64,000 bases of DNA, from positions 185,798 to 249,797 of the IMG/VR virus record IMGVR_UViG_3300033143_001962. One strand, 5' to 3'. Position 1 is the stretch's first letter, and each line of letters opens with the position of its first letter. The translations under genes and the position numbers were made by a program. The notes beneath the pieces were generated by a model. It searched no databases. It was not told the DNA's origin and worked only from the letters and a program-made list of their open reading frames with translations. Below, in pieces: positions 5,501 through 49,102 of this stretch.

Positions 5501-6360
5501 TCATTCTTCCATAAGTCAACTTGTAAACGTGCGCTATATCTAAAACCGTACAACATTGCTAACTTAGCCACCTCAGGAGCATTAACATCATACAATTCAG
5601 GATCACCACCACATGGCATTAAGTACACCTCACCGTGGAACCCCGCGTCTCTGTACTTTTCAACAAAGAAATTAACATCACGCATATCTGTTTGCTTGCT
5701 TACAACGAACTTTAAGTACACACTACCATACCTTTGATAGCTTGCTACAATTTCAGGTTGTAGTGCATCCTCCATTGCTTCACCAGAACTGCTAATCTTA
5801 GGACTAACACTAAATGTAAGCTGGTGAGATTCAGAATTTTTAATCTGATCTCTTAGTAAGTAATCTGCAAAGTCGTCTGTAATCTTTTGTGTGCCGTTTG
5901 TTTCAAATGTAACTTGTTTGTAGCCCATGTCACGTGCTGTACTTAGTAACTCAGGATAAGCTCGTTGCCACCCTAGTAGTGGCTCACCACCAGTTATAAC
6001 TAAGTGTGTGCTACCGTTGTTTTCTGCTACCGGGTTATTTTCTAAACGGACAACTTCCATTTGTCTAATAATCTCGTCAACTTCTAACATTGGACTTAAA
6101 TTCTTAAAACCTTTATGCCAACTTGCATAACTGTCACATCCGTACTTAGCAAGCGGCAGGCTATTATAACCCCAACCTGGATTATTTTTGTATTCTTTTG
6201 CAAACTGTTCCGGCTCTGTCGTTTCTTCGCCATCTTCTAATCCAAATGATCTACACTCAAAGTTGCAACCGAATGTTCTCACGAATACCGACGGAACGCC
6301 TGTGTATAATCCTTCGCCTTGTAAGCTGTGGAATATTTCTGCTATTTTAATTTTTGCCAT
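5488..6360 (-). CDS. queE: 7-carboxy-7-deazaguanine synthase (radical SAM)
   Basis: EIFHSLQGEG...FVRTFGCNFEC...CDS, VITGGEPLL, FETNGT, SVSPK, LQVDLW. Confidence 0.9.
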   Translation of the reverse strand: MAKIKIAEIFHSLQGEGLYTGVPSVFVRTFGCNFECRSFGLEDGEETTEPEQFAKEYKNNPGWGYNSLPLAKYGCDSYASWHKGFKNLSPMLEVDEIIRQMEVVRLENNPVAENNGSTHLVITGGEPLLGWQRAYPELLSTARDMGYKQVTFETNGTQKITDDFADYLLRDQIKNSESHQLTFSVSPKISSSGEAMEDALQPEIVASYQRYGSVYLKFVVSKQTDMRDVNFFVEKYRDAGFHGEVYLMPCGGDPELYDVNAPEVAKLAMLYGFRYSARLQVDLWKNEWGT

Positions 6361-35006: not shown

Positions 35007-35606
35007 TTATCCGTATATCCAATCTCCGACCATTTTGTACTTAATGTTAAATGCATTCATTAATAACTGCATTTCTTTTAAGCATTCGTGCTGCCCACCA
35101 CCACCTAGCAATGATCCACTAAGTGCTTTTAAATCACCTATGCTAATTTCAGGGAGGTAAATTCCATCATCGTACATCCAAGAGCCACCGTCGTCTCCGA
35201 CAAGCTTCTGGAATATTTCTACTCCGTTTTCTTGTTGTTCGATTATATCTCTGCTGTCGTTCATATCGTTCATAACCATATAACGCACTACTCTTATAAT
35301 AGTACTGTTATCAACACCTTGATCCATCCAGCCACGTAACCATGCATAACTCTTTTCTTTGTACGTAATGCTTTGTGCTATATCTTCATCTAACCCGTAC
35401 TCTACAAAATGTTCTGCAACTTCGTACGCTGTATCTTCTATACCTACATCTTCGCCATTGAAGAATGCTGTAATGTTAGGGTTCTTTTCGTTTAAGTAAT
35501 GCATACATCGTTCAATTGCATCTCTGTATCCGAACTGATCAGAGTCGTATGCTGGTTGAAAATCAACTAAAATTACACTATTGCCTCTTGCTTCAATTAG
35601 TTTCAT
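35007..35606 (-). CDS. isochorismatase/nicotinamidase-like cysteine hydrolase
   Basis: ILVDFQP, EKSY, GGGQHECLKE (D-K-C triad pattern); N-terminus MKLIEA. Confidence 0.55.
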   Translation of the reverse strand: MKLIEARGNSVILVDFQPAYDSDQFGYRDAIERCMHYLNEKNPNITAFFNGEDVGIEDTAYEVAEHFVEYGLDEDIAQSITYKEKSYAWLRGWMDQGVDNSTIIRVVRYMVMNDMNDSRDIIEQQENGVEIFQKLVGDDGGSWMYDDGIYLPEISIGDLKALSGSLLGGGGQHECLKEMQLLMNAFNIKYKMVGDWIYG

Positions 35607-36487
35607 TATTTTCCGGCAGCGTCATTCATTGCGTTTTTAAGTATATCCATTTTAAGCTCTTGTACTTCGTCGTAATACTCTCTACCGTACTCTAATAATG
35701 CTTTAGCTAGTTTGGCTCTTGCCGCAGGCTCTTCTTTAAGTAATCGTTCAAGTTCACGTGCATTGTTAGGAACACTTGCCCAACCGTGATGCAATGTACC
35801 GTACGTGTTTAAGAATCTATCCATTGTTTTTCTGTTAAATCCTTCTTCAGCAACTTCTTCGATTGTTTCTGCTGCTTCAAGTGCTAGTTCCCTTGCACTT
35901 TGCGTACCACGTGTAAACGATGGGTTGCGTCCGTACTTGTCATAGCCTCGTGGTATTTCACGTAAGCCTGCGTAAATAGCATCTGCCATTTTATTTAACT
36001 TGTCTTGTATTTTTGGTAAGAATGTTTTATCCATGTACTCGTAAATATCATAATCACTGACAACACCAACTTCTTCTCTGTCCCTGACACTTGCGACATC
36101 ACTTGCTGGTTTGTCGCCTCTGTACTCATGGAATGTATTAAGGAAGTAAAACTTTCCGTTGCCTTTTTTAGCACCAAATCGTTTCTTAGCATCGGAGAAT
36201 TTTTGTTCAGTGCTTTCTTTAACCTTGTCGGTCTTTGGATCGTATGTCCAAACTGTCCAGCCGGAACCGCCCCACTTACCTTTACGTATTGCATAAGCTG
36301 TCCCATCGTTGTTAACACGGAAAATTATACCGTGTTCCATATCTTTCATGTTAAGCTTTGTAACTTCTTTTGGCGTGTCTTTATGCCCGATAGTGTACTC
36401 TTTAGCAACTCTCGCAGCAAGCTTCTTCGGAACACCCACTGATTCCAGCCCTGGTGTTGCTTCTATTAAAAATTCTGTTGCTTTCAT
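35606..36487 (-). CDS. putative internal head protein
   Basis: MKATEFLIEA. Confidence 0.55.
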   Translation of the reverse strand: MKATEFLIEATPGLESVGVPKKLAARVAKEYTIGHKDTPKEVTKLNMKDMEHGIIFRVNNDGTAYAIRKGKWGGSGWTVWTYDPKTDKVKESTEQKFSDAKKRFGAKKGNGKFYFLNTFHEYRGDKPASDVASVRDREEVGVVSDYDIYEYMDKTFLPKIQDKLNKMADAIYAGLREIPRGYDKYGRNPSFTRGTQSARELALEAAETIEEVAEEGFNRKTMDRFLNTYGTLHHGWASVPNNARELERLLKEEPAARAKLAKALLEYGREYYDEVQELKMDILKNAMNDAAGK

Positions 36488-39400
36488 ACGTAATGTCCTA
36501 TATCCATGTATAAATTTTTAAATGCCGCTCTCGCTGCACTCTTCGGGGCTCCTGTTCTGCCCATTTCGATTTCCATTGCTTCCATCCAACGCATTTCACA
36601 TTGCATATCAAGTATAGCATGTCTGTCTGCTAACATTTCTATTGCCTCGCGTTCGTTCTTAGGACTAGGTATTTGTACCTCGCCTGGCTTTCCAGTGTCG
36701 ACTGCTTCACCTGCTTCTGCTGCCGCTCTTGCTTCTGCACGTTTTGCCGCAGCTTTCTTTAAGTTTACTATAAGTTGATCTTTAGTAATCATACCTGCGT
36801 TAAATGCTGCAAACAATGTCATTGCTGTTTTATCATTTGCTCGTTTATGTGTTGGCAAGTTAGTTGCCATCTTATAAAGCTTCTTAGCGTATTCTTTCTT
36901 ATGTGCTTCTGGATCTGCTGCCACTGCATACGCAACAACAAATCTGTTAATCGAATGGGTAATAGCTTCTATATCGTGTATATAATCTGCACCGCCGGCT
37001 GCTCGAAACTCTATTCTATCAGCTTTAATGCCTACTGAACTGAACTTACCAAAATCAACGTTCTCAAATGAACTCATTAAGCTGTGACTTAAGTTGTTTT
37101 TCATCTTACCCATCATGTCTGCATAGCCTTTAGCTTTTGCAGGGCGATCTTTTTCATAACCTTGTGTGCTATCAATGAAGTCAGTTAACTTAGCCAGTGA
37201 GTTTACAGCAAATTCGCTGTACTCACGACCAAACTCTCTTGCGACTTTATTATCGCCGACCATTAATACTAACTTAGCGTAATCTAGTTTACTGTGATCT
37301 ATGTTCTTCATGCTTACGTTAACATGTAAGCCTGTAGACTCATTTGCGTACCCGCCATTTTGTTTAAGGAACTGCACTATATCTTCTACGTCAGCGATAC
37401 CTTCTTCGTATTCTGTAGGAGGCATAATAATTTCCATGCCTGCATCATCATCGTCGTTAGGCTTAACAGAACTGTCTGGCATTATTATCCAATCTTCTGA
37501 TGCTACTGCTAAATCATCAGCATCATCTCCAGGTTCGCCTTCGTTTTCTTCAACGGTACGTACTTCAACAGTGTGCCCTAATTGTTGTTCCATTTTACTA
37601 GCCATATTATGCGCTGCTTCTTCGTCGAAGCTTCCATTGCTATAATCACCAGTAAAGAAACTATGCTCACTGTATAATCTGCCATCGTACTCTCTACCAA
37701 TTTCTTTAAAAGATCTAATAGTGTCTTTAATGAACCAACTACCTAAACTATATGCTGAATCATCCGGGTATGCGCTTTCCCAGAAGTCTGCTTGTACTAA
37801 CTCTCTTAGAGGCTGTACTGCTTCATCTGCATCTTCTATAAATATTTCATAGTACAATGATAGGTACGGGTTTGTACCTATTTGTGGCGTTGGCCAACTA
37901 CCAACCGCTCCTATTTCTTTATACGCTTCCTGTGATTTAGATATAACTAATTTTGCCATTTCTTCAGTAAGTTCAATGTCATCATCGTCGCCTGTAATTC
38001 TAATTATAATGTCGTCCATGTCACCTGTCGTCGTCATGTTAACCATAGCTTCAACCTTTTCATCATCGTTATAATACGGTACATTAATAATATGTTTTAA
38101 TTGATCCTCAACCCATTCAGGCTCTTTCTCGGCACTAATCCATTCCATGTGCTCTTGTTCCATTTCTACCCAGACTTCATCATCGTCGCTGTTGTCGAAG
38201 TAGTCTTGTAAGTCTCTTAAAGATGTTTCATCTGTCACCTTAGGGTTACTGTCATCATCGGATGCTACGCATACTTCAAACTCTAATCCTATAACCGGAC
38301 GGGCTGTTTGTACTATTTTGTTTACTTGTTTTCGGAGGCCACCCGGTGTCATATCCAGTTCAAATAATGCACCTTCCATTATGTTTGATACTGTCTTGTA
38401 ACTACCGTTTGATTTAAGTAAAGGGGGAATGCCACCTTTATCTACTGTAAGGCCTAACTTGGCTGCTTCACGTTTAGTACTGTTCTCATCAACGTCTGCT
38501 GTCGTGTTAACACCTTTAACTATAATGCCTACACCTTCATTGACGCCTTTATCATTCCAACGTGTGAGGAATTCACCTTCGTCATCTACTACATCGAACG
38601 TAGCTTGCCCTGGTCTAATAAATTCCTTAGGACGTGGGTATTTGCTAAGTTTAAGTTTTGATAGTTTAATTACTTTTTCTAAAATGCCCGGATCAATATC
38701 TGCAAAATCCTTTATTAAATCAGGTTCATTGGCAAATGCTATAACCTTGACTTCGTCAGTTGGGTTATTGATATTATTAAACACAAAGGCAACACCAACA
38801 CTAACTTCGCTACCTAGCTGGATTGCTTTAAGTTGTATCTCTGGATCTGGGTTTTTAATGTATTTAATGTTCTGCAAGCCGCCATCTCTCAATACAACAG
38901 ACTGCAATTCTTTAGATGGATTGTCTATGTACTTTAAATTCCACGGACTTGTGTGTACAGCATCATACAACTCGGAGTCTGATGGATTGTCCATCAATGG
39001 AACCATGCCGTGTCGTGTTGCGTACTTATTGAGTACTTTCTTTATCTGAGGATAGGTGTCTACTAGCTCTTTCATTTCTTCTGGCGTTAACTCTTGATCT
39101 CGTGCGTTCATGTACGAGTTGCTTTGGAAATGGAATTGGAACTTACCTAGCTTTTTGGTTTGTATAATCCAAAGCGGACCTTGTTGATGATAATGCTCAA
39201 AATAATTGTCGCCGCCGTAGCTTGCTGCTGTACACCACTTAGTGCCTTTACCAAAGAAACAACTTGCTTCTTCAGTAGCTGGTACTACTATCTCAACATC
39301 TTTATCCTTGTACATTAATTCAGCTGCGGAGCTATCCAGGAACGCTTTCTTTTCTCTGCGGTCAGCTTCTCTATTTGATACTGTATCTTTTTCTTCAAAC

Positions 39401-40788
39401 GGTTCCAGCACATTGTATAAATCATCCAACGATAATCTGTTTAAGTCTCTGTGCTCTGGTGGTAGTTTTGATTTAACTTTTGCGAACTTCATTAGCTCTT
39501 GTTTAATTTGTCCGATATCTTCTAGCTTGTACTCGCCAGCTATGTATCGATTTGCTAACCACTGTATTGCTTTTGTGCTTGCTACTGCGAGCTTATTGAT
39601 TATTTCTAATGCGGTAACTTCAGTATGTGTATTACCAGTTTCTTCTTCGTAACGTGCAATTAACTTATCATTTAATTGATCTGCTACGTGCTGTGCTCTG
39701 TCTTCGTCAAGCATTTCGCCTTCGTGGAATTCATCACCGACTAAGTCAACACCAGTAAACCTTTGTATCATTTCCCAAGCTTCTTTATGCTTGCGTAATG
39801 CTAACAAGTTTCTAAATTGATCTATAAGTCCTTGGTTAGCTTCTTTGTAAAATTTCATTACTTCCATAGCACCTAAGTTGCCGCTGTACGCTGCTTCCAT
39901 TGTTGCTATATCAGATGCTTGTTCGTGCAATGAATCGTAGTCGTAATCATCAAACAGTGTATCTGCACCGCTGTATAATTCTTTTATGATATCTTCTGCT
40001 GTGCGACCACTTTCACCGTAGTTGTTAAAGTCTGCTGCGAGCTCTTGCTCTAAGTCTGTATCTACTTCGTCGTTCACGTGTTCTAAACTTAAATGTTCAT
40101 CTTCAAAGCTGCGTCTCTTATCCCATAGCTTATCAAAGTATCCATCTTTACGTAACATCTTAAATGCTAAGTTCTCTGGACCAAACTCACCGTTCTCACT
40201 TAGTCCTGCTTTTCTATAACGTTTTACAATGTCAAGCACATCATCAAGGTATTGTCTATTGTCGGTTGCGAGTGCTCTAATTGCAAGTTGCTTTAACTTA
40301 TTGTATTTGAAGTAACTTGCTTCTTCATCTACGTTTGCACGTTGCTTAGTTGGAAAACGGTTCCATTCGTTATTGAAAACACTATAGTTTCCTAAGCTCA
40401 CATGCGGTTGCGCTGCATCTTGTACATACAGTTCAACATCGTACCCCTTGATCTTAATATCGTGCTGATCATTATATTGGTACTTTTTAGAATCAAATAA
40501 CTCTCTGTATACTTCGTTGTCTGGTAGTTGAGAGAAGTCAACGATTAAATGCAAGTCAACGTCTGAGTGAGGCGTGTAACTATATGCTGCATTAGACCCG
40601 CTTAAAGTAATATCAACTAAAGACGTAAGTTCAACGCCGAGAAATTCACGAAAATGATCAGCTATACCAATCAAGGACTGATGAACCTCAGGACGCATCA
40701 CTTCATCTACGAAGAGTTGCGGATTAAGATCATTATTGAAATTAATTGCTTTTGTTATTTGAAACTTGTCAAGTTCTTCTAAATTCAT
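36484..40788 (-). CDS. 1434-aa multidomain protein: Pol-beta-superfamily nucleotidyltransferase, WCT module, short repeats, putative amidoligase
   Basis: LSGSNAAYSYTPHSDVDLH; GTKWCTAA; YIDNPS/YIKNPD repeats; IGLEFEV, PDSSV, GMEIIMP, STGLHVNVS, IEFRAAGG. Confidence 0.75.
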   Translation of the reverse strand: MNLEELDKFQITKAINFNNDLNPQLFVDEVMRPEVHQSLIGIADHFREFLGVELTSLVDITLSGSNAAYSYTPHSDVDLHLIVDFSQLPDNEVYRELFDSKKYQYNDQHDIKIKGYDVELYVQDAAQPHVSLGNYSVFNNEWNRFPTKQRANVDEEASYFKYNKLKQLAIRALATDNRQYLDDVLDIVKRYRKAGLSENGEFGPENLAFKMLRKDGYFDKLWDKRRSFEDEHLSLEHVNDEVDTDLEQELAADFNNYGESGRTAEDIIKELYSGADTLFDDYDYDSLHEQASDIATMEAAYSGNLGAMEVMKFYKEANQGLIDQFRNLLALRKHKEAWEMIQRFTGVDLVGDEFHEGEMLDEDRAQHVADQLNDKLIARYEEETGNTHTEVTALEIINKLAVASTKAIQWLANRYIAGEYKLEDIGQIKQELMKFAKVKSKLPPEHRDLNRLSLDDLYNVLEPFEEKDTVSNREADRREKKAFLDSSAAELMYKDKDVEIVVPATEEASCFFGKGTKWCTAASYGGDNYFEHYHQQGPLWIIQTKKLGKFQFHFQSNSYMNARDQELTPEEMKELVDTYPQIKKVLNKYATRHGMVPLMDNPSDSELYDAVHTSPWNLKYIDNPSKELQSVVLRDGGLQNIKYIKNPDPEIQLKAIQLGSEVSVGVAFVFNNINNPTDEVKVIAFANEPDLIKDFADIDPGILEKVIKLSKLKLSKYPRPKEFIRPGQATFDVVDDEGEFLTRWNDKGVNEGVGIIVKGVNTTADVDENSTKREAAKLGLTVDKGGIPPLLKSNGSYKTVSNIMEGALFELDMTPGGLRKQVNKIVQTARPVIGLEFEVCVASDDDSNPKVTDETSLRDLQDYFDNSDDDEVWVEMEQEHMEWISAEKEPEWVEDQLKHIINVPYYNDDEKVEAMVNMTTTGDMDDIIIRITGDDDDIELTEEMAKLVISKSQEAYKEIGAVGSWPTPQIGTNPYLSLYYEIFIEDADEAVQPLRELVQADFWESAYPDDSAYSLGSWFIKDTIRSFKEIGREYDGRLYSEHSFFTGDYSNGSFDEEAAHNMASKMEQQLGHTVEVRTVEENEGEPGDDADDLAVASEDWIIMPDSSVKPNDDDDAGMEIIMPPTEYEEGIADVEDIVQFLKQNGGYANESTGLHVNVSMKNIDHSKLDYAKLVLMVGDNKVAREFGREYSEFAVNSLAKLTDFIDSTQGYEKDRPAKAKGYADMMGKMKNNLSHSLMSSFENVDFGKFSSVGIKADRIEFRAAGGADYIHDIEAITHSINRFVVAYAVAADPEAHKKEYAKKLYKMATNLPTHKRANDKTAMTLFAAFNAGMITKDQLIVNLKKAAAKRAEARAAAEAGEAVDTGKPGEVQIPSPKNEREAIEMLADRHAILDMQCEMRWMEAMEIEMGRTGAPKSAARAAFKNLYMDIGHYV

Positions 40789-40793
40789 ATCTG

Positions 40794-40799
40794 TATTTA
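40794..40799 (-). promoter_or_regulatory. late promoter core (TAAATA)
   Basis: ATAAATA 5 nt upstream of the 40788 start. Confidence 0.65.
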
Positions 40800-40826
40800 T
40801 GCCTAACTAGACACTGTACAGAAATG

Positions 40827-41492
40827 TTATAGTCGGAAGTTGTTTATGAATTCGTTAAATTCGCGGATTAGTGATTCAGTTTGTACAACGCCTAAGCGTT
40901 TGTCAAACAATTTTTTAAGAGTTGCAGTTGGTTTCTTATCGTACATATCTGCTAATATTTGTGTACGCTGTTCATCGCTTGCATTTGCATACATATCGCG
41001 TATCTCTGTTGCACCTGTAATAGCTTGTCCTGCTATTGTAAATTCAACTGTCGGAGTTACTTCTACGTATATATGGCCATTAGCTACCGGTTGTGGGTTG
41101 TCTGTTAACCATTGTATAGCTGCTCTACTACCGTCTTTCTTAAGTGCAAAACCTTCTGCATCTTTAGTTTTACCGATTAAACGGTCACCATCTTTTCTGC
41201 TTAGTGCTACAATTAGAACAGTGTTCTTTTCATTGAATGGAAGTACTGCTTGTATTAAGTCTTTATTGTAAACACTTTTAGGTGCGATGAATTTGTCTAC
41301 TGGAATGCCCATCATCTTAGCAATTTTTTGTTTCTCTTTCCAAGCAAATGGATCTTTAGGACCTGTTGGTTTATCCGCAGATGCTACATACACCGCACCA
41401 TTGCCGAACTTACTTACAAGTGCATCGTAAGAAGCTTTGTGGCCTTTATGCATTGGTTGGAATCGTCCACCATAAATTACTATTGTTTTCAT
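40827..41492 (-). CDS. HIGH-motif cytidylyl/adenylyltransferase-like protein
   Basis: IYGGRFQPMHKGH, DPFAWKEK, GATEIR; TAAATA at 41498-41503. Confidence 0.8.
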   Translation of the reverse strand: MKTIVIYGGRFQPMHKGHKASYDALVSKFGNGAVYVASADKPTGPKDPFAWKEKQKIAKMMGIPVDKFIAPKSVYNKDLIQAVLPFNEKNTVLIVALSRKDGDRLIGKTKDAEGFALKKDGSRAAIQWLTDNPQPVANGHIYVEVTPTVEFTIAGQAITGATEIRDMYANASDEQRTQILADMYDKKPTATLKKLFDKRLGVVQTESLIREFNEFINNFRL

Positions 41493-42169: not shown

Positions 42170-42823
42170 TTATTTATCACTAATTATCGTGTATATTTTA
42201 CTTGTTACGCCCGGGGCCATTAAATCTAGTACCACCTGCATCTTTGCATCATTAACATCAATGAAAAAATGTGTTTCTGTATGCTGCCACCAATATTTAC
42301 CAAATGCCCATCTTAGCAAAGACCCGCTCGAGCGTACATCAGCGTCATACGACGTTAAAAATTTAGCAATATTCTCACGCACATCCTTTCCACATTTAAC
42401 ATGCCTAAATGGAATGCGGTACTTGTACTCTGAGTTTTTCCTGTATATTGTTCCTGGCTCGCATGTAACACTAGCTTCTGTAATAACACCAGTTTTATCA
42501 AAAGCTAGTAACTCATGAATAGTATCTATGTTATTTGTGTACGCTATTGTTGTATTACGAGATGCAGCAAATCGCATATCTTCACTCTGCACTATGTAAT
42601 CATGTAAGTTGCATAAGTTATCAAGCAATAGTGCTAATCCCTCAGGAGCACGGTTGTGTATGTGATATTTTTCAGCCCGCGTACATATTCTCTCATGTGA
42701 CACCGGACGGTGCTTGGCCCCGCGTATAACCGAGGAGCCTGGCACACTTAATCTTACACTGTACTTGTACTTGTTAAAGAATAACTTATCAGTACTCTTA
42801 AGCTTTAGGTTTAAATTGGTCAA
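42170..42823 (-). CDS. hypothetical protein
   Basis: 217-aa ORF; KLFFNKYKYSVRL. Confidence 0.6.
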   Translation of the reverse strand: MTNLNLKLKSTDKLFFNKYKYSVRLSVPGSSVIRGAKHRPVSHERICTRAEKYHIHNRAPEGLALLLDNLCNLHDYIVQSEDMRFAASRNTTIAYTNNIDTIHELLAFDKTGVITEASVTCEPGTIYRKNSEYKYRIPFRHVKCGKDVRENIAKFLTSYDADVRSSGSLLRWAFGKYWWQHTETHFFIDVNDAKMQVVLDLMAPGVTSKIYTIISDK

Positions 42824-45104
42824 GTACTACGTACCCTTCGTCGTCTGTATGCCCTGCAGGTGTTTTCGCAGGCAACATTGGAGGTGGTAACAATTGACTA
42901 GTAGTAAACGTAATTTTATCACCTTCGTAATCTACTCTAACAGTACAATCTGTTAACCCATCGAATAAAATCTTTTTACTTAACGGAGTTTTAATAATCT
43001 CGTTAATCTTTCTGTCGATTGGTCTTGCACCTAAGCTTGAATCGTAACCAGCTTCAGCAATATGTTGTACCGCTGCTTCTGTTATGTTCAATACAATCTT
43101 CTTAGCTTTTAAACTTTCCTTAAGTACGTTAATGAACTTAACCACAATTTTCTTAATGTTAATATCTTCAAGCTTCTGGAACTTAACAATACCATCAAGT
43201 CTGTTACGTAATTCTGGCTTGAAGAATTCTTTAGTAGCTTTATCTTCTTCGCCTGTACGTTCTAGTGATTTGCCAAAGCCAATGTTGTTCTGCTCGTTAG
43301 CCGATGCACCCAAGTTTGAAGTAAGTATAATAATACAGTTAGTAAGGTTAACTTCTTTACCACCTGCACTTGTAATTTTACCTTCATCAAGTATTTGTAA
43401 TAACACTGAACTAATATCTTGGTGTGCTTTTTCAATTTCATCAAACAATACAACTGAGTAAGGATGTTTACTTACATCACTAATAAGTTTACCGCCACCT
43501 TGTGATCCATCTTCAAATCCAACGTAACCCGGAGGTGCACCGATTAATGTACTAAGCGAATGTTTCTCTTGGTACTCGGACATATCGTAACGTAACAATT
43601 TCATGTCTAAGTTCGAGCTTAATAATTTAGCAAGTTCTGTTTTACCTGTACCAGTTGGTCCTAAGAATAAGAAACTAGCTACCGGCTTAGTTGCTGAACC
43701 TAACCCACTAAAGTTAACATAGATCTTCTCGAGTACTTGCTCGACGGCTTCTTCCTGACCGTACAATTTGTCATCTATGTTACTCTTTAGTGACATTAAG
43801 TTTGCGCTTTGTTCGTTACCTAGTCTTTCAACTGGAACGCTTGCCATCTTGCTAACTTGAGCTAGTACTTTTTCTTCGTTAATGATAGCTGACTTATTAT
43901 CTATCGCACGTTCTCTTGCACATGCCGCATCAATAATGTCAATTGACTTATCCGGATTCTTTCTGTCATGAATGTAACGTGTGCTTAAATCAACTGCTGA
44001 CTTAATAGCATCTGCTGTAATAGTAACACTATGGAACTCAGACAAACGTTTAGCAACACCAGTAATAATTTTAATAGTGCTATCGTAATCTGGCTCGTCT
44101 ACTGTTAAGTTAAAGAAGCGGCGCATAAGTGCCTTATCTTTCTCAAAGGATTCGTAGTACTCGTCCCAAGTAGTGTTTGCAATAACTTTAATCTTACCAC
44201 GTGTGATAGCTGGCTTCAACATGTTTGCAAAGTCTAAACTGCCGCCTGTAGTTGCACCAGCACCTTTCATAGTATGTGCTTCATCAATAAACAGTACTGC
44301 CTTGCCACTTGCTTCAAGTGCTGTAATAATCTTTTGGAACTTCTCTTCAAAGTCACCACGGTACTTACTGCCAGCTAACATGCTGCCAATCTCTAAGCTC
44401 CATACAGTGTGATCTTTTAAGAACTCAGGTACATCGTTAGCAAGGATCTTTTGTGCAAGTCCTTCTACGATTGCAGTTTTACCTACACCTGGGTCGCCAA
44501 TCATTAGTACGTTAGACTTAAACTTCTTAGCAAGTATTTCAATGGTGCTTTTAATTTCTTCGCCGCGGCCGATAAGTGGTTCTAAGTCACCGTCTTCTGC
44601 TTGTCTGCTTAAGTTAATACAATGTTCTTCAAGTAACTCTTCAGACTGTGTTGGTGTTAATACTACATTACCATCACTGTAATGTTCATTCCAGTAATCA
44701 GCAAATGAATCCCTATCATCAATGCCGTACTTAAGTATAAAATAATTTGCGTGGCTATTTGCTTCGCCTGTGATACTTAAAAACAAATCAACTGTAGTAA
44801 CATAACGTCGGTTGCTGAACAGTACCTGTGTTACTGCTCTATTAAATACACGTTCTAATGTGTTTGTACGCTTTGGTTGTGTGTTTGGCGGAAGTGGTGT
44901 AGTAAGTAAACTATCTAAGTACTCGTCTACATCATTGATCATGTCATCAATTTCAACGCCATAGCCTTTTAAGCAATTATAAAATGGCTGATAACTTAAA
45001 AGTGCTTCTAATAAGTGTTCCACAAGTACGTACTCGTGTCCTTTCTTCTTTGCTAAGTTAATAGCATAGTCTGTAATTTGTTCAATCTCTGGATTAATTT
45101 GCAT
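42798..45104 (-). CDS. clpA: ClpA-like AAA+ unfoldase
   Basis: Clp N-domain; GDPGVGKT, GSKYRGDFEE, FIDEAH; GPTGTGKT, DMSEYQE, LFDEIEKAH, FKPELRNRLD, GARP. Confidence 0.92.
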   Translation of the reverse strand: MQINPEIEQITDYAINLAKKKGHEYVLVEHLLEALLSYQPFYNCLKGYGVEIDDMINDVDEYLDSLLTTPLPPNTQPKRTNTLERVFNRAVTQVLFSNRRYVTTVDLFLSITGEANSHANYFILKYGIDDRDSFADYWNEHYSDGNVVLTPTQSEELLEEHCINLSRQAEDGDLEPLIGRGEEIKSTIEILAKKFKSNVLMIGDPGVGKTAIVEGLAQKILANDVPEFLKDHTVWSLEIGSMLAGSKYRGDFEEKFQKIITALEASGKAVLFIDEAHTMKGAGATTGGSLDFANMLKPAITRGKIKVIANTTWDEYYESFEKDKALMRRFFNLTVDEPDYDSTIKIITGVAKRLSEFHSVTITADAIKSAVDLSTRYIHDRKNPDKSIDIIDAACARERAIDNKSAIINEEKVLAQVSKMASVPVERLGNEQSANLMSLKSNIDDKLYGQEEAVEQVLEKIYVNFSGLGSATKPVASFLFLGPTGTGKTELAKLLSSNLDMKLLRYDMSEYQEKHSLSTLIGAPPGYVGFEDGSQGGGKLISDVSKHPYSVVLFDEIEKAHQDISSVLLQILDEGKITSAGGKEVNLTNCIIILTSNLGASANEQNNIGFGKSLERTGEEDKATKEFFKPELRNRLDGIVKFQKLEDINIKKIVVKFINVLKESLKAKKIVLNITEAAVQHIAEAGYDSSLGARPIDRKINEIIKTPLSKKILFDGLTDCTVRVDYEGDKITFTTSQLLPPPMLPAKTPAGHTDDEGYVVLDQFKPKA

Positions 45105-45523
45105 TATTTTGCCTTCTTCTTTGCTTTCTTTTTAGCAACCTTTTTAACTACTGTACCGTTATGTAAGTACTCTATAGCTGTCCGGATTGCTCCGTCTGCA
45201 TCATTGATCTCAATCTTCTTATCTTTCCCGAGATAGTTTTGATAACTTATATGTATTATACTATCTTTTGAATCGGTTGTCGACTGTTTTGAATCCAAAA
45301 TAGCCGGATTAAAGAAGAAATGTGGCTTTATTTTGGTTACAAGTATCTTTGAATCTACGTTCACTTCAGGTGCTGTAATAACATCCTTAGTGGTTAGGTT
45401 CAATGCAATGAGCATTTCGATGCCAAGTTTTTGTACGGTTGTTGGCGTAGTGTAATCTACGTCTTGTGCTGGTGTTTTTTGTGGTTTTTCAATTATTTTT
45501 AACATAAAATTATTTAGCTTCAC
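45104..45523 (-). CDS. hypothetical with Lys/Ala-rich tail
   Basis: ends KKVAKKKAKKKAK. Confidence 0.5.
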   Translation of the reverse strand: MKLNNFMLKIIEKPQKTPAQDVDYTTPTTVQKLGIEMLIALNLTTKDVITAPEVNVDSKILVTKIKPHFFFNPAILDSKQSTTDSKDSIIHISYQNYLGKDKKIEINDADGAIRTAIEYLHNGTVVKKVAKKKAKKKAK

Positions 45524-46263
45524 TTGTGGTGTTGCTTAATAATATTTATTATGTCCTCCGGAATGTTATCTGGTATTATTGCTTCGATGTGAACTAGCAT
45601 ATCACCTACGGCTAACATATTCTGTCTAGTACGCATACCTTTACCTTTCACTCTTAGGTAAGTGCCTGGTTGTGTGCCCTTTGGAACCTTTAAGCGTATA
45701 GTCTTTTTATCTATTGTAGTAACGTCAACTTCCGTGCCTAAAATTAAATCCCATATATTAACCTTAACAGATTTAATAAGATTCATCTCACTTACTTCCC
45801 ACTCAGAGTCGGGCAGAATCAAGTACGATATTATTATATCACGTCCTTCTGCAAGGTTAGGATACCTAACAGTTTCGCCATGACGTGTACCAGGCGGTAT
45901 GTCAATTTCGAATGATTTGTTTTGTCCATTGATAGTTAGTTCTATGTACTTAGTGCCACCGTTTATTGCGTCGGACAATGTAATATTAATATTAACTCTA
46001 TAAAACTGTTGCCTTTGTTGTTGCTGGTGTCTTTTAAAGAAATCACTGAAGTCGGATGCTGAAGTAAACTTGTACTCGTTGACATCCGGAGCGGGTGGCC
46101 CGTCTTTAACTTGGTCGTACGCTGCTTGCACTTCCTTGAACTTTTCATCCTTGCCATCGTTGCGGTCCGGGTGATGTTTCATAGCAAGTTTTTTGTATGC
46201 TTTTTTAATGTCTGGCAGCGGAGTGTCACGGGTGACACCTAATGTAACATACGGGTCACTCAT
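45520..46263 (-). CDS. dnaJ: DnaJ/CbpA-like co-chaperone (no zinc finger)
   Basis: DPYVTLGV, KHHPDRN (HPD), LRVKGKGM, GDMLV. Confidence 0.9.
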   Translation of the reverse strand: MSDPYVTLGVTRDTPLPDIKKAYKKLAMKHHPDRNDGKDEKFKEVQAAYDQVKDGPPAPDVNEYKFTSASDFSDFFKRHQQQQRQQFYRVNINITLSDAINGGTKYIELTINGQNKSFEIDIPPGTRHGETVRYPNLAEGRDIIISYLILPDSEWEVSEMNLIKSVKVNIWDLILGTEVDVTTIDKKTIRLKVPKGTQPGTYLRVKGKGMRTRQNMLAVGDMLVHIEAIIPDNIPEDIINIIKQHHK

Positions 46264-47533: not shown

Positions 47534-49102
47534 CTATGCGTAATCAATCTTACTTTTATTCTTATATCCCCATACTAGTACAAGTACGGTTAATAGAACA
47601 ATAGCTATAAATGTAGGATGCTGTAACAAATCTTTACCTGGCAATAAAGCTGCGTTGATTTGTCCTTGTCCTACATTGTATCCGAATAATTCTTTTAATT
47701 TAATTAACGGATAGCCTGCAACATTAAACAATTGAAATGTTTGTAGTGCAAGTTCCTCAATTCTGTACCCTAATATAAATCCTATCATTAGCGCGGGTCT
47801 GCTAAATCTGTACTTCTTTAATTGCAATCCTAGCACTGTAAAAAACACTAACAGTATAACATTTTCTACGCCATAAGTCGCGAATCCTGACGTGTAAGTT
47901 GCCCAAACTATTAAAGATAGTATAATGGGAAAGTAGTATTTATAGGGTACATAGGTGATCCTCGAAATATACTTAATCAAAACTAAGCAAATTATACCTG
48001 TTAATAATGTAGCTGCTAAGAATCCTATACTCAAGGCATTAAAGAAGTTTGAGTCTGCAAGTACACTTTCACTGTCTAGCGTAAGTTCAAATCCGATGGC
48101 ACCAAACAATCCTACAACCACGGCTGCAAATGGTGCACCTGGTATTCCAAAAAGTACTGTAGGTATCATGCTTGTTGCTTTCTGTGCGTTGTTGCTACCT
48201 TCTGGTCCTATAACACCTTTAATGTTACCGTTACCAAATTCCTCTTTCGGGTTGGATGCTACTGTTGCTCCGTAACTTAACCAGTCACTTATGCCACCGC
48301 TGAGACCAGGCAAGAAGCCAACTACACTTCCTATCAGTCCTCCCTTAAGCGACAGTTTCCATTCTTTAAAAGATATTTTAATACCATCTTTAACTTGTTT
48401 ATAATTGTCTGTTGCGTAGACACTAAGTTTAGAATCTTTTTGTAACGCAAGGATAAGTTCGGGCATAGCAAATATACCTGCCATAAGTGGTATCATTGGA
48501 ATACCGTGGCCTGCGTCACCTTCTAAAAATTCCCAGCCCATCGTAAAGCGTGGAGCTGCTGTCATTGGATCTGTGCCTACTAGGCTAAAGAATATACCTA
48601 AGGATAGTGCTATAAGTGAACGTACCCAAAATTTATTAGATACAAAACTAACAGTGACAAATGCCATTATACAAAACGCAAATAGTTCTGCTTGGCCAAC
48701 GCCACCTAAGTGTGCTGGCAGTAATAAAAAATCTTTATAATAAGGTAAGAGTAAGAATGTTGCTGCACCAAATATTAATCCATTAACAGTTGACGTTGTA
48801 ATAGCTGCTGATAATGCATAACTTGCCTTACCTTGCTGAGCAAGAGGGAAGCCGTCCACCATTGTTGCTGCGCTGCTATTAGCCCCTGGTATACCTAAAA
48901 GTATACTAGCAAAGGTGTCGCCTGTTGTACTTGCTGCGACAACAGACATAATAAAGACTACAGCGAGATAAGGATCAACTGCTTGCAATATAGCAATAAA
49001 CGGAAATAGCGCGACAAGACCTGTCGTTGCGCCTGCTGCCGGGATTATGCCAACAACAAGTCCGTAAAATGTGCCCAGGAATAAGGCTAATAAGTATGTC
49101 AT
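47534..49102 (-). CDS. tctA: tripartite tricarboxylate transporter large subunit
   Basis: GIIPAAGATT, ILLGIPG...ATMVDGF, GPEGSNNA, LFGIPG; many TM helices. Confidence 0.88.
   Translation of the reverse strand: MTYLLALFLGTFYGLVVGIIPAAGATTGLVALFPFIAILQAVDPYLAVVFIMSVVAASTTGDTFASILLGIPGANSSAATMVDGFPLAQQGKASYALSAAITTSTVNGLIFGAATFLLLPYYKDFLLLPAHLGGVGQAELFAFCIMAFVTVSFVSNKFWVRSLIALSLGIFFSLVGTDPMTAAPRFTMGWEFLEGDAGHGIPMIPLMAGIFAMPELILALQKDSKLSVYATDNYKQVKDGIKISFKEWKLSLKGGLIGSVVGFLPGLSGGISDWLSYGATVASNPKEEFGNGNIKGVIGPEGSNNAQKATSMIPTVLFGIPGAPFAAVVVGLFGAIGFELTLDSESVLADSNFFNALSIGFLAATLLTGIICLVLIKYISRITYVPYKYYFPIILSLIVWATYTSGFATYGVENVILLVFFTVLGLQLKKYRFSRPALMIGFILGYRIEELALQTFQLFNVAGYPLIKLKELFGYNVGQGQINAALLPGKDLLQHPTFIAIVLLTVLVLVWGYKNKSKIDYA

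What the first reader, a model, noticed from the sequence alone, without database searches (positions are those of the whole stretch)
36484..40788. 1434-aa fusion of a Pol-beta nucleotidyltransferase and a COOH-NH2 amidoligase with intervening repeat modules
Seen: N-terminal GS-x9-DxD NTase, an EAAYSGNLGAME module, a KWCTAA module with YIxNP repeats, a VGIIVKGVNTTADV module, and a C-terminal amidoligase (GLEFE, PDSS, MEI, TGLHVN, IEFR) split by a long acidic insert. Known: phage amidoligases were predicted to modify cell wall or proteins; Pol-beta NTases include protein AMPylases and CD-NTases; T4 packages the modifying enzyme Alt. Inference: an ejected dual protein-tagging enzyme (nucleotidylation plus peptide ligation) targeting host machinery or second-messenger immunity.
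Basis: partly seen in the sequence, partly recalled or inferred. Interest (0 to 1): 0.65.

Follow-up and report, generated by a model that had tools for sequence, protein, structure and literature searches.

The report
Giant late phage protein: nucleotidyltransferase plus amidoligase
A 1434-residue protein of an uncultured jumbo phage does join an apparently active nucleotidyltransferase to an apparently active amidoligase. It belongs to a large, undescribed, virus-only family of modular giant proteins that carry a late-type promoter motif and may be delivered into the host with the phage DNA.

Summary

- **Residues 1-235:** a Pol-beta-fold nucleotidyltransferase with invariant G64-S65, D76/D78 and E119.
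- **Residues 814-1295:** a glutamine-synthetase-fold Amidoligase_2 with all five motifs invariant. The "acidic insert" (842-1100) models as a folded helical domain.
- **Residues 356-750:** a free-standing phage cassette (KWCT domain plus DUF4116 repeats) inserted only in this protein. A relative of it is a mass-spectrometry-confirmed virion protein of phage PA5oct.

The fusion is not unique. Hundreds of metagenomic phage proteins (234-2288 aa) start with the same nucleotidyltransferase. Their tails range from nothing to 1-3 amidoligases, SLT, GH19, LysM, an M48 peptidase or DUF5661. No cultured phage holds the fusion.

New here: the gene carries a T4-type late promoter motif (ATAAATA at -12 to -6 from the ATG). 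In this genome the same motif precedes the portal and baseplate genes, and it is conserved upstream of relatives.

Best reading: a late-made, polyvalent-type two-enzyme effector, probably packaged and ejected. Packaging and targets are inferred only. A link to second-messenger immunity has no support.

The parts
36484..40788 (-). Whole gene: 1434-aa modular protein (P0001)
   Evidence: ORF list and translation; 438 homologues in the 0.55-1.75x length range.
40794..40800 (-). ATAAATA, a T4-type late-promoter-like motif at -12 to -6 from the A of the ATG. T4 geometry would place the transcript start on the ATG itself, giving a leaderless mRNA.
   Evidence: Sequence read. The motif is enriched 13-fold upstream of ORFs in this genome. 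It precedes the portal, baseplate hub, baseplate wedge and a virion structural gene. TAAATA at -10 to -15 recurs upstream of most of the 53 related loci. T4 geometry from PMC1524935; ATAAATA as the late motif of Rak2-like jumbo phage CBB from PMC5259590.
40084..40788 (-). Residues 1-235: Pol-beta-fold nucleotidyltransferase core plus a four-helix C-terminal subdomain. This is the constant 'head' of the family.
39724..40083 (-). Residues 236-355: acidic linker, then a small helical module (EAAYSGNLGAME...). It is shared with the nearest relatives and is found as the C-terminus of a separate 200-aa protein in L055.
38539..39723 (-). Residues 356-750: inserted cassette. It comprises a helical N-part, a KWCT domain (invariant G513, W518, C519, T520, Y533), then 3-4 DUF4116-type repeats (YIxNP).
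   Evidence: Absent from the nearest relatives P0002-P0017. 43 free-standing homologues of 242-648 aa were found, and DUF4116 is matched in 20 of 31. Atlas feature score 0.94 to DUF4116 clusters. 39% identity to PA5oct virion protein EST35_0205.
38353..38538 (-). Residues 751-812: conserved linear motif (VKGVNTTxDV...KLG...G.PP) ahead of the amidoligase. It is modelled as mostly disordered.
   Evidence: Near-invariant T19, D21, A31, K33, G42 and P44 of alignment A2. pLDDT is 35-65. It occurs with or without an amidoligase in related loci.
36904..38349 (-). Residues 814-1295: glutamine-synthetase-fold carboxylate-amine ligase (Amidoligase_2), with a helical insert at 842-1100.
37489..38265 (-). 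Residues 842-1100: acidic but folded helical insert between the first catalytic strand (GLEFE) and the rest of the ligase
   Evidence: 26% D+E and net charge -51. pLDDT is about 90 and the segment is helical. Conserved F, W, A and M positions lie inside it.
36484..36903 (-). Residues 1296-1434: helical C-terminal tail with the conserved EYAKKLYK motif
40827..41492 (-). Upstream neighbour p221: HIGH-superfamily (NMN-adenylyltransferase-like) nucleotidyltransferase, carrying the same -12 late motif
   Evidence: Pfam CTP_transf_like at E 1e-5. NCBIfam NMNAT models at E 3e-7, below their cut-offs. Found upstream of the nucleotidyltransferase gene in 41 of 55 related loci. Motif seen.
42798..46263 (-). 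Conserved upstream block: DnaJ (45520-46263), a 139-aa ORF, and a ClpA-like AAA+ unfoldase (42798-45104, with an IGF loop at residue 608)
   Evidence: ClpA TIGR02639 at E 2e-230 and DnaJ domains. ClpA homologue present in 43 of 55 related loci. IGF motif seen.

Best explanation
The gene encodes a late-expressed, two-enzyme modular protein of an uncultured T4-related jumbo phage.

Shown:
- An N-terminal Pol-beta-fold nucleotidyltransferase and a C-terminal glutamine-synthetase-fold ATP-dependent carboxylate-amine ligase both keep their full catalytic motifs.
- The protein belongs to a large, virus-restricted family. The same nucleotidyltransferase head is followed by swappable modules.
- This copy has additionally acquired a KWCT/DUF4116 cassette.
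- The gene carries the late-promoter-type motif that in this genome also precedes virion genes.

Inferred:
- The protein is made late and loaded into the capsid.
- It enters the host with the DNA, as polyvalent proteins and T4 Alt do.
- In the cytoplasm, the only compartment with NTP and ATP, the nucleotidyltransferase transfers a nucleotidyl group to a hydroxyl. The ligase joins an amine (amino acid or peptide) to a carboxylate. The targets would be host proteins or cell-envelope precursors.
- In relatives, SLT, GH19 and LysM modules would open the wall on the way in, and an M48 peptidase would cut the polyprotein.
For: **Enzymes**
- The catalytic residues are invariant.
- The fold matches are to nucleotidyltransferases and to glutamine synthetase. 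The Pfam amidoligase hit is above its cut-off.

**Family and modularity**
- All 119 listed homologues share residues 1-235 plus an amidoligase, with different middles.
- ORFs at the conserved start run from 234 to 1876 aa, and 30 of 54 carry an amidoligase.
- Relatives carry SLT+LysM, GH19+LysM, Peptidase_M48, DUF5661, or three amidoligases.
- Only 7 hits, all in MAGs, were found in 185,579 species genomes.

**Late expression**
- ATAAATA is enriched 13-fold upstream of ORFs.
- It lies upstream of the portal, baseplate hub, baseplate wedge and a virion structural gene.
- It sits at -12 to -6 of this gene and is conserved in relatives.
- The neighbouring DNA polymerase and ClpA genes lack it.

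**Virion link**
- The middle cassette is 39% identical over 226 aa to PA5oct EST35_0205, annotated 'structural protein, ESI-MS/MS'.
- Precedent for injected multidomain enzymes comes from PMC5512222.
Against: - There is no proteomic evidence for this family, and no cultured phage holds the fusion.
- The gene lies between ClpA/DnaJ and the DNA polymerase, not beside portal or MuF genes.
- Solo versions of the nucleotidyltransferase sit in replication regions of T4-like phages.
- P0001 itself has no wall-degrading or peptidase module.
- Although the phage has a gp21-type protease, no T4-type [LI]xE cleavage site stands out at its linkers.
- Late transcription also fits lysis or assembly roles.
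- The PA5oct homology concerns only the inserted cassette, which the nearest relatives lack.
- The late promoter is inferred from sequence alone.
Confidence: 0.45

Rival explanations
1. The protein is a late cytoplasmic enzyme that is not packaged. It acts inside the already infected cell on peptidoglycan precursors or other envelope components, or on phage particle proteins. This could tune lysis, exclude superinfection, or mature virions.
For: - Relatives fuse the same head to GH19, SLT and LysM.
- In Caulobacter phage Cr30, a GH19-like 'lytic enzyme' gene overlaps the start of the solo nucleotidyltransferase gene, with a TagD-like HIGH nucleotidyltransferase just upstream.
- A HIGH nucleotidyltransferase is also the upstream neighbour here and in 41 of 55 loci.
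- Late promoter motif.
- Both enzymes need cytoplasmic nucleotides.
Against: - Wall hydrolase and LysM modules need the periplasm. In proteins of 1500-2300 aa for which Pfam reports no membrane-anchor or export domain (signal peptides were not tested), that suits an ejected protein better than an endolysin.
- P0001 has no wall-binding module.
- The KWCT/DUF4116 cassette has a virion-protein relative.
Confidence: 0.28
2. The protein is a biosynthetic enzyme for a modified nucleotide, a DNA hypermodification or a small metabolite. The nucleotidyltransferase and amidoligase would act in sequence on a nucleotide-linked or DNA-borne substrate.
For: - Amidoligase genes co-occur with thymidine-hypermodification genes in viral contigs (PMC8989533).
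- The gene and its solo relatives lie near the DNA polymerase.
- An NMNAT-like neighbour is present.
- The closest structural matches of the head modify small molecules (AadA, AAD(9)).
Against: - The nucleotidyltransferase occurs without an amidoligase in 24 of 54 loci.
- The scans of the neighbouring genes named no hydroxymethylase, kinase or aGPT-Pplase.
- The variable SLT, GH19 and peptidase modules do not fit a biosynthetic enzyme.
- Timing is late rather than replication-phase.
Confidence: 0.12
3. One reading: the nucleotidyltransferase makes or intercepts cyclic-oligonucleotide signals to disarm CBASS-type immunity.
For: CdnE, CdnC and CdnD are among the Foldseek matches at probability 0.8-0.99.
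Against: - The 235-aa two-domain layout is the size of ANT enzymes, not of CD-NTases.
- No family-level sequence match was found.
Confidence: 0.05
4. The protein is a purely structural virion or scaffold protein whose enzyme-like domains are inactive.
For: Its large size, and the cassette shared with a virion protein.
Against: Every metal- and nucleotide-binding motif of both enzymes is invariant in 42 and 39 diverged relatives, down to 23-40% identity.
Confidence: 0.03

Closest known systems
Polyvalent proteins of phages and conjugative elements (Iyer et al. 2017, PMC5512222)
   Same: - Very large multidomain proteins whose domain sets vary between relatives.
- They mix protein- or nucleotide-modifying enzymes with lysozyme/SLT and zincin peptidase modules.
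- They are proposed to enter the host with the DNA.
   Different: - That survey has no amidoligase. It found Pol-beta nucleotidyltransferases only in conjugative-element versions.
- This family has a fixed N-terminal nucleotidyltransferase head and no MuF.
- It lies by ClpA and the DNA polymerase, not by head genes.
Amidoligase_2 / COOH-NH2 ligases of phages (Pfam PF12224; Iyer et al. 2009, not readable here)
   Same: Glutamine-synthetase-like fold and motif set; the Pfam score is above the cut-off.
   Different: - About 260 residues of helical insert follow the first catalytic strand.
- It is fused into a giant protein.
- The scans found none of the usual partners among the neighbours (glutamine amidotransferase-like peptidase or Aig2 cyclotransferase, recalled from my own memory of the Pfam description).
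Aminoglycoside nucleotidyltransferases AadA / AAD(9) / ANT(4')
   Same: - Best structural matches.
- Same two-part layout, with a Pol-beta core plus a helical C-domain in about 250 residues.
   Different: - Only 13-18% identity over about 105 aligned residues. No sequence-family match.
- The family is virus-restricted. Nothing points to an antibiotic substrate.
T4 Alt and internal proteins
   Same: A late-made enzyme packaged in the head and injected to modify host proteins. This is the functional model adopted here.
   Different: - Alt is an ADP-ribosyltransferase with a defined capsid-targeting and cleavage signal.
- No such signal was found here.
GlnE-glutamine synthetase and PafA/Pup systems (analogies from general knowledge)
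   Same: - In the first, a Pol-beta nucleotidyltransferase acts on a glutamine-synthetase-fold enzyme.
- In the second, a ligase of that fold tags proteins for an AAA+ unfoldase.
- Here a ClpA-like unfoldase lies in the same conserved block.
   Different: - No sequence-level relation to GlnE or PafA was seen.
- PafA and Dop were not among the top structural matches.
- No Pup-like gene was identified.

Membership tests
Pol-beta nucleotidyltransferase superfamily | hG[GS] motif followed by DxD on the next strand | tested here: met
   G64-S65 and D76/D78 are invariant in 42 sequences. They align to the GS...DxD of PDB 2rff.
Pol-beta nucleotidyltransferase superfamily | Third acidic residue on a later beta strand | tested here: met
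   E119 is invariant and lies in predicted strand 116-124.
Pol-beta nucleotidyltransferase superfamily | Alpha-beta sandwich fold of the core | tested here: met
Pol-beta nucleotidyltransferase superfamily | Pfam NTP_transf_2 above its gathering score | tested here: not met
   The score is 12.7-14.4 bits against a cut-off of 21. 38 of 42 relatives match weakly, the best at E 4.7e-5.
Pol-beta nucleotidyltransferase superfamily | Nucleotidyl transfer activity | not testable with these tools
   This needs an enzyme assay.
CD-NTase (CBASS cyclases) | Specific structural or sequence similarity beyond the shared core, and associated effector genes | tested here: inconclusive
Amidoligase_2 (PF12224) | Pfam score above the gathering cut-off | tested here: met
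   39.3 bits against 22, covering residues 1065-1165. The six-frame genome search gave 42.1 bits.
Amidoligase_2 (PF12224) | Glutamine-synthetase-like catalytic fold | tested here: met
Amidoligase_2 (PF12224) | Conserved acidic, His and Arg motifs (GxExE, PDxS, E, TGxH, ExR) | tested here: met
   G834, E836, E838, D1105, S1107, E1119, T1152, H1155, E1260 and R1262 are invariant in 39 sequences.
Amidoligase_2 (PF12224) | Usual gene partners (amidotransferase-like peptidase or Aig2 cyclotransferase) | tested here: not met
   No such family was found among the neighbours scanned with Pfam, PHROGs and NCBIfam.
Polyvalent proteins (Iyer 2017) | Large protein with several unrelated catalytic domains and an architecture that varies between relatives | tested here: met
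Polyvalent proteins (Iyer 2017) | Signature modules (zincin peptidase, lysozyme/SLT, MuF, helicase or methylase) | tested here: inconclusive
   Relatives have Peptidase_M48, SLT and GH19. P0001 itself has none. No MuF was seen.
Polyvalent proteins (Iyer 2017) | Packaged in the virion and delivered with the DNA | not testable with these tools
   Only indirect evidence is available: the late promoter motif and the homology of the cassette to a PA5oct virion protein.
DUF4116 repeat proteins (PF13475) | Pfam match to the repeats | tested here: inconclusive
   P0001 356-750 has no hit even at E 1. However, 20 of 31 aligned homologues match, the best at 5.5e-51. The atlas feature score is 0.94.

The most novel reading that the evidence does not exclude
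The conserved block (DnaJ, ClpA-like unfoldase with an IGF ClpP-docking loop, HIGH nucleotidyltransferase, and the nucleotidyltransferase-amidoligase giant) could be a phage-borne protein-tagging and unfolding system. In this reading the glutamine-synthetase-fold ligase attaches an amino-acid or peptide tag to host proteins, as PafA does with Pup. The phage's own ClpA then feeds the tagged proteins to host ClpP. The fused nucleotidyltransferase would switch the ligase or the targets by nucleotidylation, as GlnE does for glutamine synthetase.
Probability: 0.06. Interest if true: 0.85.

Novelty: new variant of a known kind. Interest (0 to 1): 0.55.

Why it matters
Jumbo phages carry many giant proteins of unknown role. 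This one defines a large family, with hundreds of members in metagenomes and none in cultured phages. I found no description of it in the literature I could search.

The family combines two covalent-modification chemistries behind a fixed nucleotidyltransferase head, and it carries a late-type promoter motif. If it is injected, it would add nucleotidylation and amide ligation to the known repertoire of virion-delivered host-modifying enzymes, which so far includes ADP-ribosylation, acetylation and phosphorylation. It would also give phage amidoligases, predicted in 2009 and to my knowledge still uncharacterised, a testable setting.

The invariant residues give ready catalytic mutants. The modular relatives give natural domain-swap controls.

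Tried and rejected
**Searches that gave nothing**
- Sequence searches of the three thirds of the protein against PDB chains found nothing. Profile searches gave only 2rff at E 1.3 and a spurious GINS/Sld5 hit at E 0.04.
- Megablast of 10 kb around the gene against cultured phages gave no match.
- NCBIfam named nothing for P0001.
- No paralogue of any module exists elsewhere in the 250-kb record.
- No public sequencing run was listed for the gene, so expression and the transcript start could not be checked.

**Ideas tested and dropped**
- The exact T4 octamer TATAAATA is not enriched in the window (5 found, 7.9 expected). The 7-mer ATAAATA is the enriched form.
- Obligatory ClpA linkage fails. 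Atu_ph07 and PA5oct have ClpA but no homologue of this nucleotidyltransferase. The synteny may therefore be inherited gene order.
- No ClpP was found in the held 72% of the genome.
- The phage has a gp21-type prohead protease, but reading the linkers of P0001 by eye I saw no convincing [LI]xE site. The conserved LS[LI]xE at the end of the nucleotidyltransferase domain is also the natural end of the solo proteins, so I did not count it as a cleavage site.
- The downstream 293-aa gene overlaps the stop codon. It has no homologue in the 55 related loci and no usable atlas hit.
- A LicD/fukutin-like phosphotransferase role, suggested by the HIGH nucleotidyltransferase neighbour, was considered. 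No LicD match appeared in the 25 families listed from the Pfam scan of relatives or in the listed structural matches.

**Unavailable or unused**
- The 2009 amidoligase paper could not be read.
- The exhaustive HMM search and complex prediction were not used. The family was already well populated, and no binding claim is made.
Full report
**1. The observation**

Window 36484-40788 on the minus strand is a single ATG-to-stop ORF of 1434 residues.
- GS at 64-65 and DVD at 76-78. The spacer is ten residues, not nine.
- EAAYSGNLGAME at 298 and KWCTAA at 517.
- YIDNP, YIKNP and INNP at 620, 643 and 673.
- VGIIVKGVNTTADV at 753.
- GLEFE at 834, PDSS at 1104, MEI at 1118, TGLHVN at 1152 and IEFR at 1259.

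Pfam finds Amidoligase_2 above its curated cut-off (39.3 against 22 bits). It gives only a sub-threshold NTP_transf_2 match. PHROGs places residues 14-235 in phrog_36119 (E 6e-38, function unknown) and the middle in four other unannotated families.

**2. The nucleotidyltransferase**

An alignment of 42 relatives has these columns invariant: G64, S65, D76, D78, E119 and a basic/acidic cluster (R192, E201, E205, N206, K210, R213).

An AlphaFold2 model built on that alignment has pLDDT 82-96 over most of the core. It shows helix, strand (ending at GS), strand (DxD), helix, strand (E119), then four helices.

The structural and sequence matches are:
- Foldseek's best matches are spectinomycin/streptomycin adenylyltransferases and CdnE cyclases, at probability 0.98-1.0.
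- 38 of the 42 relatives match NTP_transf_2 weakly, the best at E 4.7e-5.
- A profile search of PDB sequences aligns the GS...DxD segment to the putative nucleotidyltransferase 2rff.

This is a Pol-beta-fold nucleotidyltransferase with a complete metal site. It belongs to no described family, and the data do not favour CD-NTases over other branches.

**3. The amidoligase**

In 39 relatives the following are invariant: G834, E836, E838, D1105, S1107, E1119, T1152, H1155, E1260, F1261 and R1262.

The intervening stretch (842-1100) is acidic, with 26% D+E and net charge -51. It is nevertheless modelled as a helical domain at pLDDT about 90, and it holds conserved positions. It is an inserted domain rather than a spacer.

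**4. The middle**

The nearest relatives (P0002-P0017) match residues 1-355 and about 750-1433 and lack 356-748. That segment is a cassette that exists as free-standing phage proteins. 43 homologues of 242-648 aa were found. G513, W518, C519, T520 and Y533 are invariant, and Pfam DUF4116 is matched in 20 of the 31 aligned sequences. An atlas feature score of 0.94 points the same way.

One such protein, PA5oct EST35_0205, is 39% identical over 226 residues and is annotated as a structural protein found by ESI-MS/MS. In related loci the cassette is either fused to the nucleotidyltransferase or encoded a few kb downstream.

**5. The family**

- All 119 listed homologues of 792-2288 aa share the N-terminal 235 residues (46-86% identity) and an amidoligase, with unrelated middles.
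- In 54 IMG/VR loci, the ORF that starts with this domain is 234-1876 aa. Thirty carry an amidoligase and 24 do not. Seven of the latter are solo proteins of about 236 aa.
- Members scanned with Pfam add SLT+LysM, GH19+LysM, Peptidase_M48, DUF5661, or three amidoligase copies.
- A further 941 short proteins match the head alone.
- Only seven hits, all in metagenome bins, were found in one genome each of 185,579 prokaryote species.
- No record among 50,697 cultured or deposited phages holds the fusion. Solo heads occur in T4-like cyanophages, Caulobacter phage Cr30, Maribacter phages, Lak phages and other huge phages. Solo amidoligases occur in Atu_ph07 and RsoM2USA.

**6. The surroundings**

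The window is the last 64 kb of a 249,797-bp IMG/VR record estimated 72% complete. Its DNA polymerase is 40-44% identical to those of Atu_ph07, Phosso, XaC1 and Rak2-like coliphages.

Upstream of the gene lie DnaJ, a ClpA-like AAA+ protein, three small ORFs and an NMN-adenylyltransferase-like HIGH nucleotidyltransferase. Downstream are unannotated ORFs and then the family-B DNA polymerase. The ClpA and HIGH-nucleotidyltransferase neighbours recur in 43 and 41 of 55 related loci.

Atu_ph07 and PA5oct have ClpA without this nucleotidyltransferase, so the synteny may be inherited order. Cr30 shows a parallel arrangement: a TagD-like HIGH nucleotidyltransferase, then a GH19-like lytic enzyme overlapping the solo nucleotidyltransferase, then the DNA polymerase.

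**7. Timing**

- The 7-mer ATAAATA is enriched 13-fold in the 45 nt upstream of ORFs in this genome (28 ORFs against 2.1 expected).
- 29 of its 82 copies lie within 60 nt of a same-strand start.
- The genes it precedes include the portal, baseplate hub, baseplate wedge and a virion structural protein.
- The target gene has it at -12 to -6 (GCATAAATACAGAT-ATG). So do the HIGH nucleotidyltransferase and a conserved 97-aa ORF (the 105-aa ORF read from its internal ATG). The DNA polymerase, ClpA and DnaJ do not.
- T4 late promoters are TATAAATA at -13 to -6 from the transcript start, with a weak first T in other T4-like phages (PMC1524935). ATAAATA was proposed as the late motif of the Rak2-like jumbo phage CBB (PMC5259590).
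- With that geometry the transcript would start on the ATG.
- TAAATA at -10 to -15 is found upstream of the gene in most of 53 related loci, although the flanks differ.

I take this as good sequence-level evidence for late transcription. It remains an inference.

**8. Interpretation**

The two enzymes look active, and the family behaves like the polyvalent proteins described for phages and conjugative elements (PMC5512222). It is huge and recombining, and it mixes modifying enzymes with wall-opening and peptidase modules.

Three things make a virion-packaged, ejected effector the best single reading:
- late timing;
- a cassette related to a confirmed virion protein;
- wall-hydrolase modules in relatives.

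I put it at about 0.45. There is no proteomic evidence, no targeting or cleavage signal, and no head-gene adjacency. The polyvalent-protein survey lists neither amidoligases nor phage-borne Pol-beta nucleotidyltransferases.

The rivals, in order of weight:
- **A late cytoplasmic enzyme acting on envelope precursors or particle proteins (about 0.28).** This is the main rival.
- **A nucleotide, DNA-modification or metabolite enzyme (about 0.12).** Amidoligases co-occur with thymidine-hypermodification genes (PMC8989533).
- **Second-messenger interference (about 0.05).** This has no specific support.
- **A dead structural protein (about 0.03).** The invariant active sites contradict it.

**9. Novelty**

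Searches for amidoligase together with polyvalent proteins, jumbo phages, nucleotidyltransferase or virion found no description of this family. I rate it a new variant of a known kind. It is a polyvalent-type phage protein with a new fixed head and a new enzyme pair. Neither domain, nor the idea of injected modifying enzymes, is new in kind.

Noticed in passing
Whole record G000; in the window, the starts at 40788, 41492, 34998 and 50686: Twelve genes have ATAAATA exactly at -12 to -6 from their ATG and no Shine-Dalgarno sequence. With T4 late-promoter geometry these would be leaderless late mRNAs. Another 17 genes carry the motif elsewhere in the 60 nt upstream; those with it 25-36 nt upstream, including the portal and baseplate genes, mostly show an AGGAG/GGGA-type site.
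   Followed up: partly
window 47534-49102 (-): A full-length TctA-family tripartite tricarboxylate transporter membrane subunit (Pfam E 9e-89) is encoded in the phage record. This is an unusual auxiliary gene for a phage.
   Followed up: no
window 42798-45104 (-) and 45520-46263 (-): The phage encodes a ClpA-like double-AAA+ unfoldase with an N-domain and an IGF loop (residue 608) of the kind that docks ClpP. A complete DnaJ co-chaperone lies beside it. No ClpP gene was found in the held 72% of the genome.
   Followed up: partly
L055 2364-4845: In a related 217-kb contig (DNA polymerase 58% identical), the same position holds two different GS...DxD nucleotidyltransferase-like proteins (328 and 299 aa) followed by the HIGH nucleotidyltransferase. 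The EAAY helical module forms the C-terminus of a separate 200-aa Gly-rich protein at 5590-6192.
   Followed up: no
G000:C1:168508-169224 (-): A 238-aa protein matches the T7 gp0.7-type kinase PHROG ('inhibitor of host transcription', E 1.4e-16). It also carries the -12 late motif, so it may be another late-made host-modifying enzyme.
   Followed up: no
L065 (Caulobacter phage Cr30) 2311-4157: A TagD-like HIGH nucleotidyltransferase, a tRNA, and a GH19-like 'lytic enzyme' precede the solo homologue of the nucleotidyltransferase head. The end of the lytic enzyme gene overlaps the start of the nucleotidyltransferase gene by 8 nt. This echoes the GH19 fusions and the HIGH-nucleotidyltransferase neighbour in the jumbo-phage family.
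   Followed up: partly
Alignment A1, columns after the nucleotidyltransferase domain (for example P0048, P0064, P0114): Many family members have a Lys-rich run just after the head. It is followed by an aromatic/Gly-rich stretch (YG..FGG.FFPGYHYY) and a Gly/Asp/Glu run. Its role is unknown, and the same kind of stretch occurs in the L055 200-aa protein.
   Followed up: no
window 35606-36487 (-): The 293-aa gene downstream overlaps the stop codon of the target by 4 nt, which suggests translational coupling. It has no homologue in the 55 related loci and no family or atlas match.
   Followed up: partly
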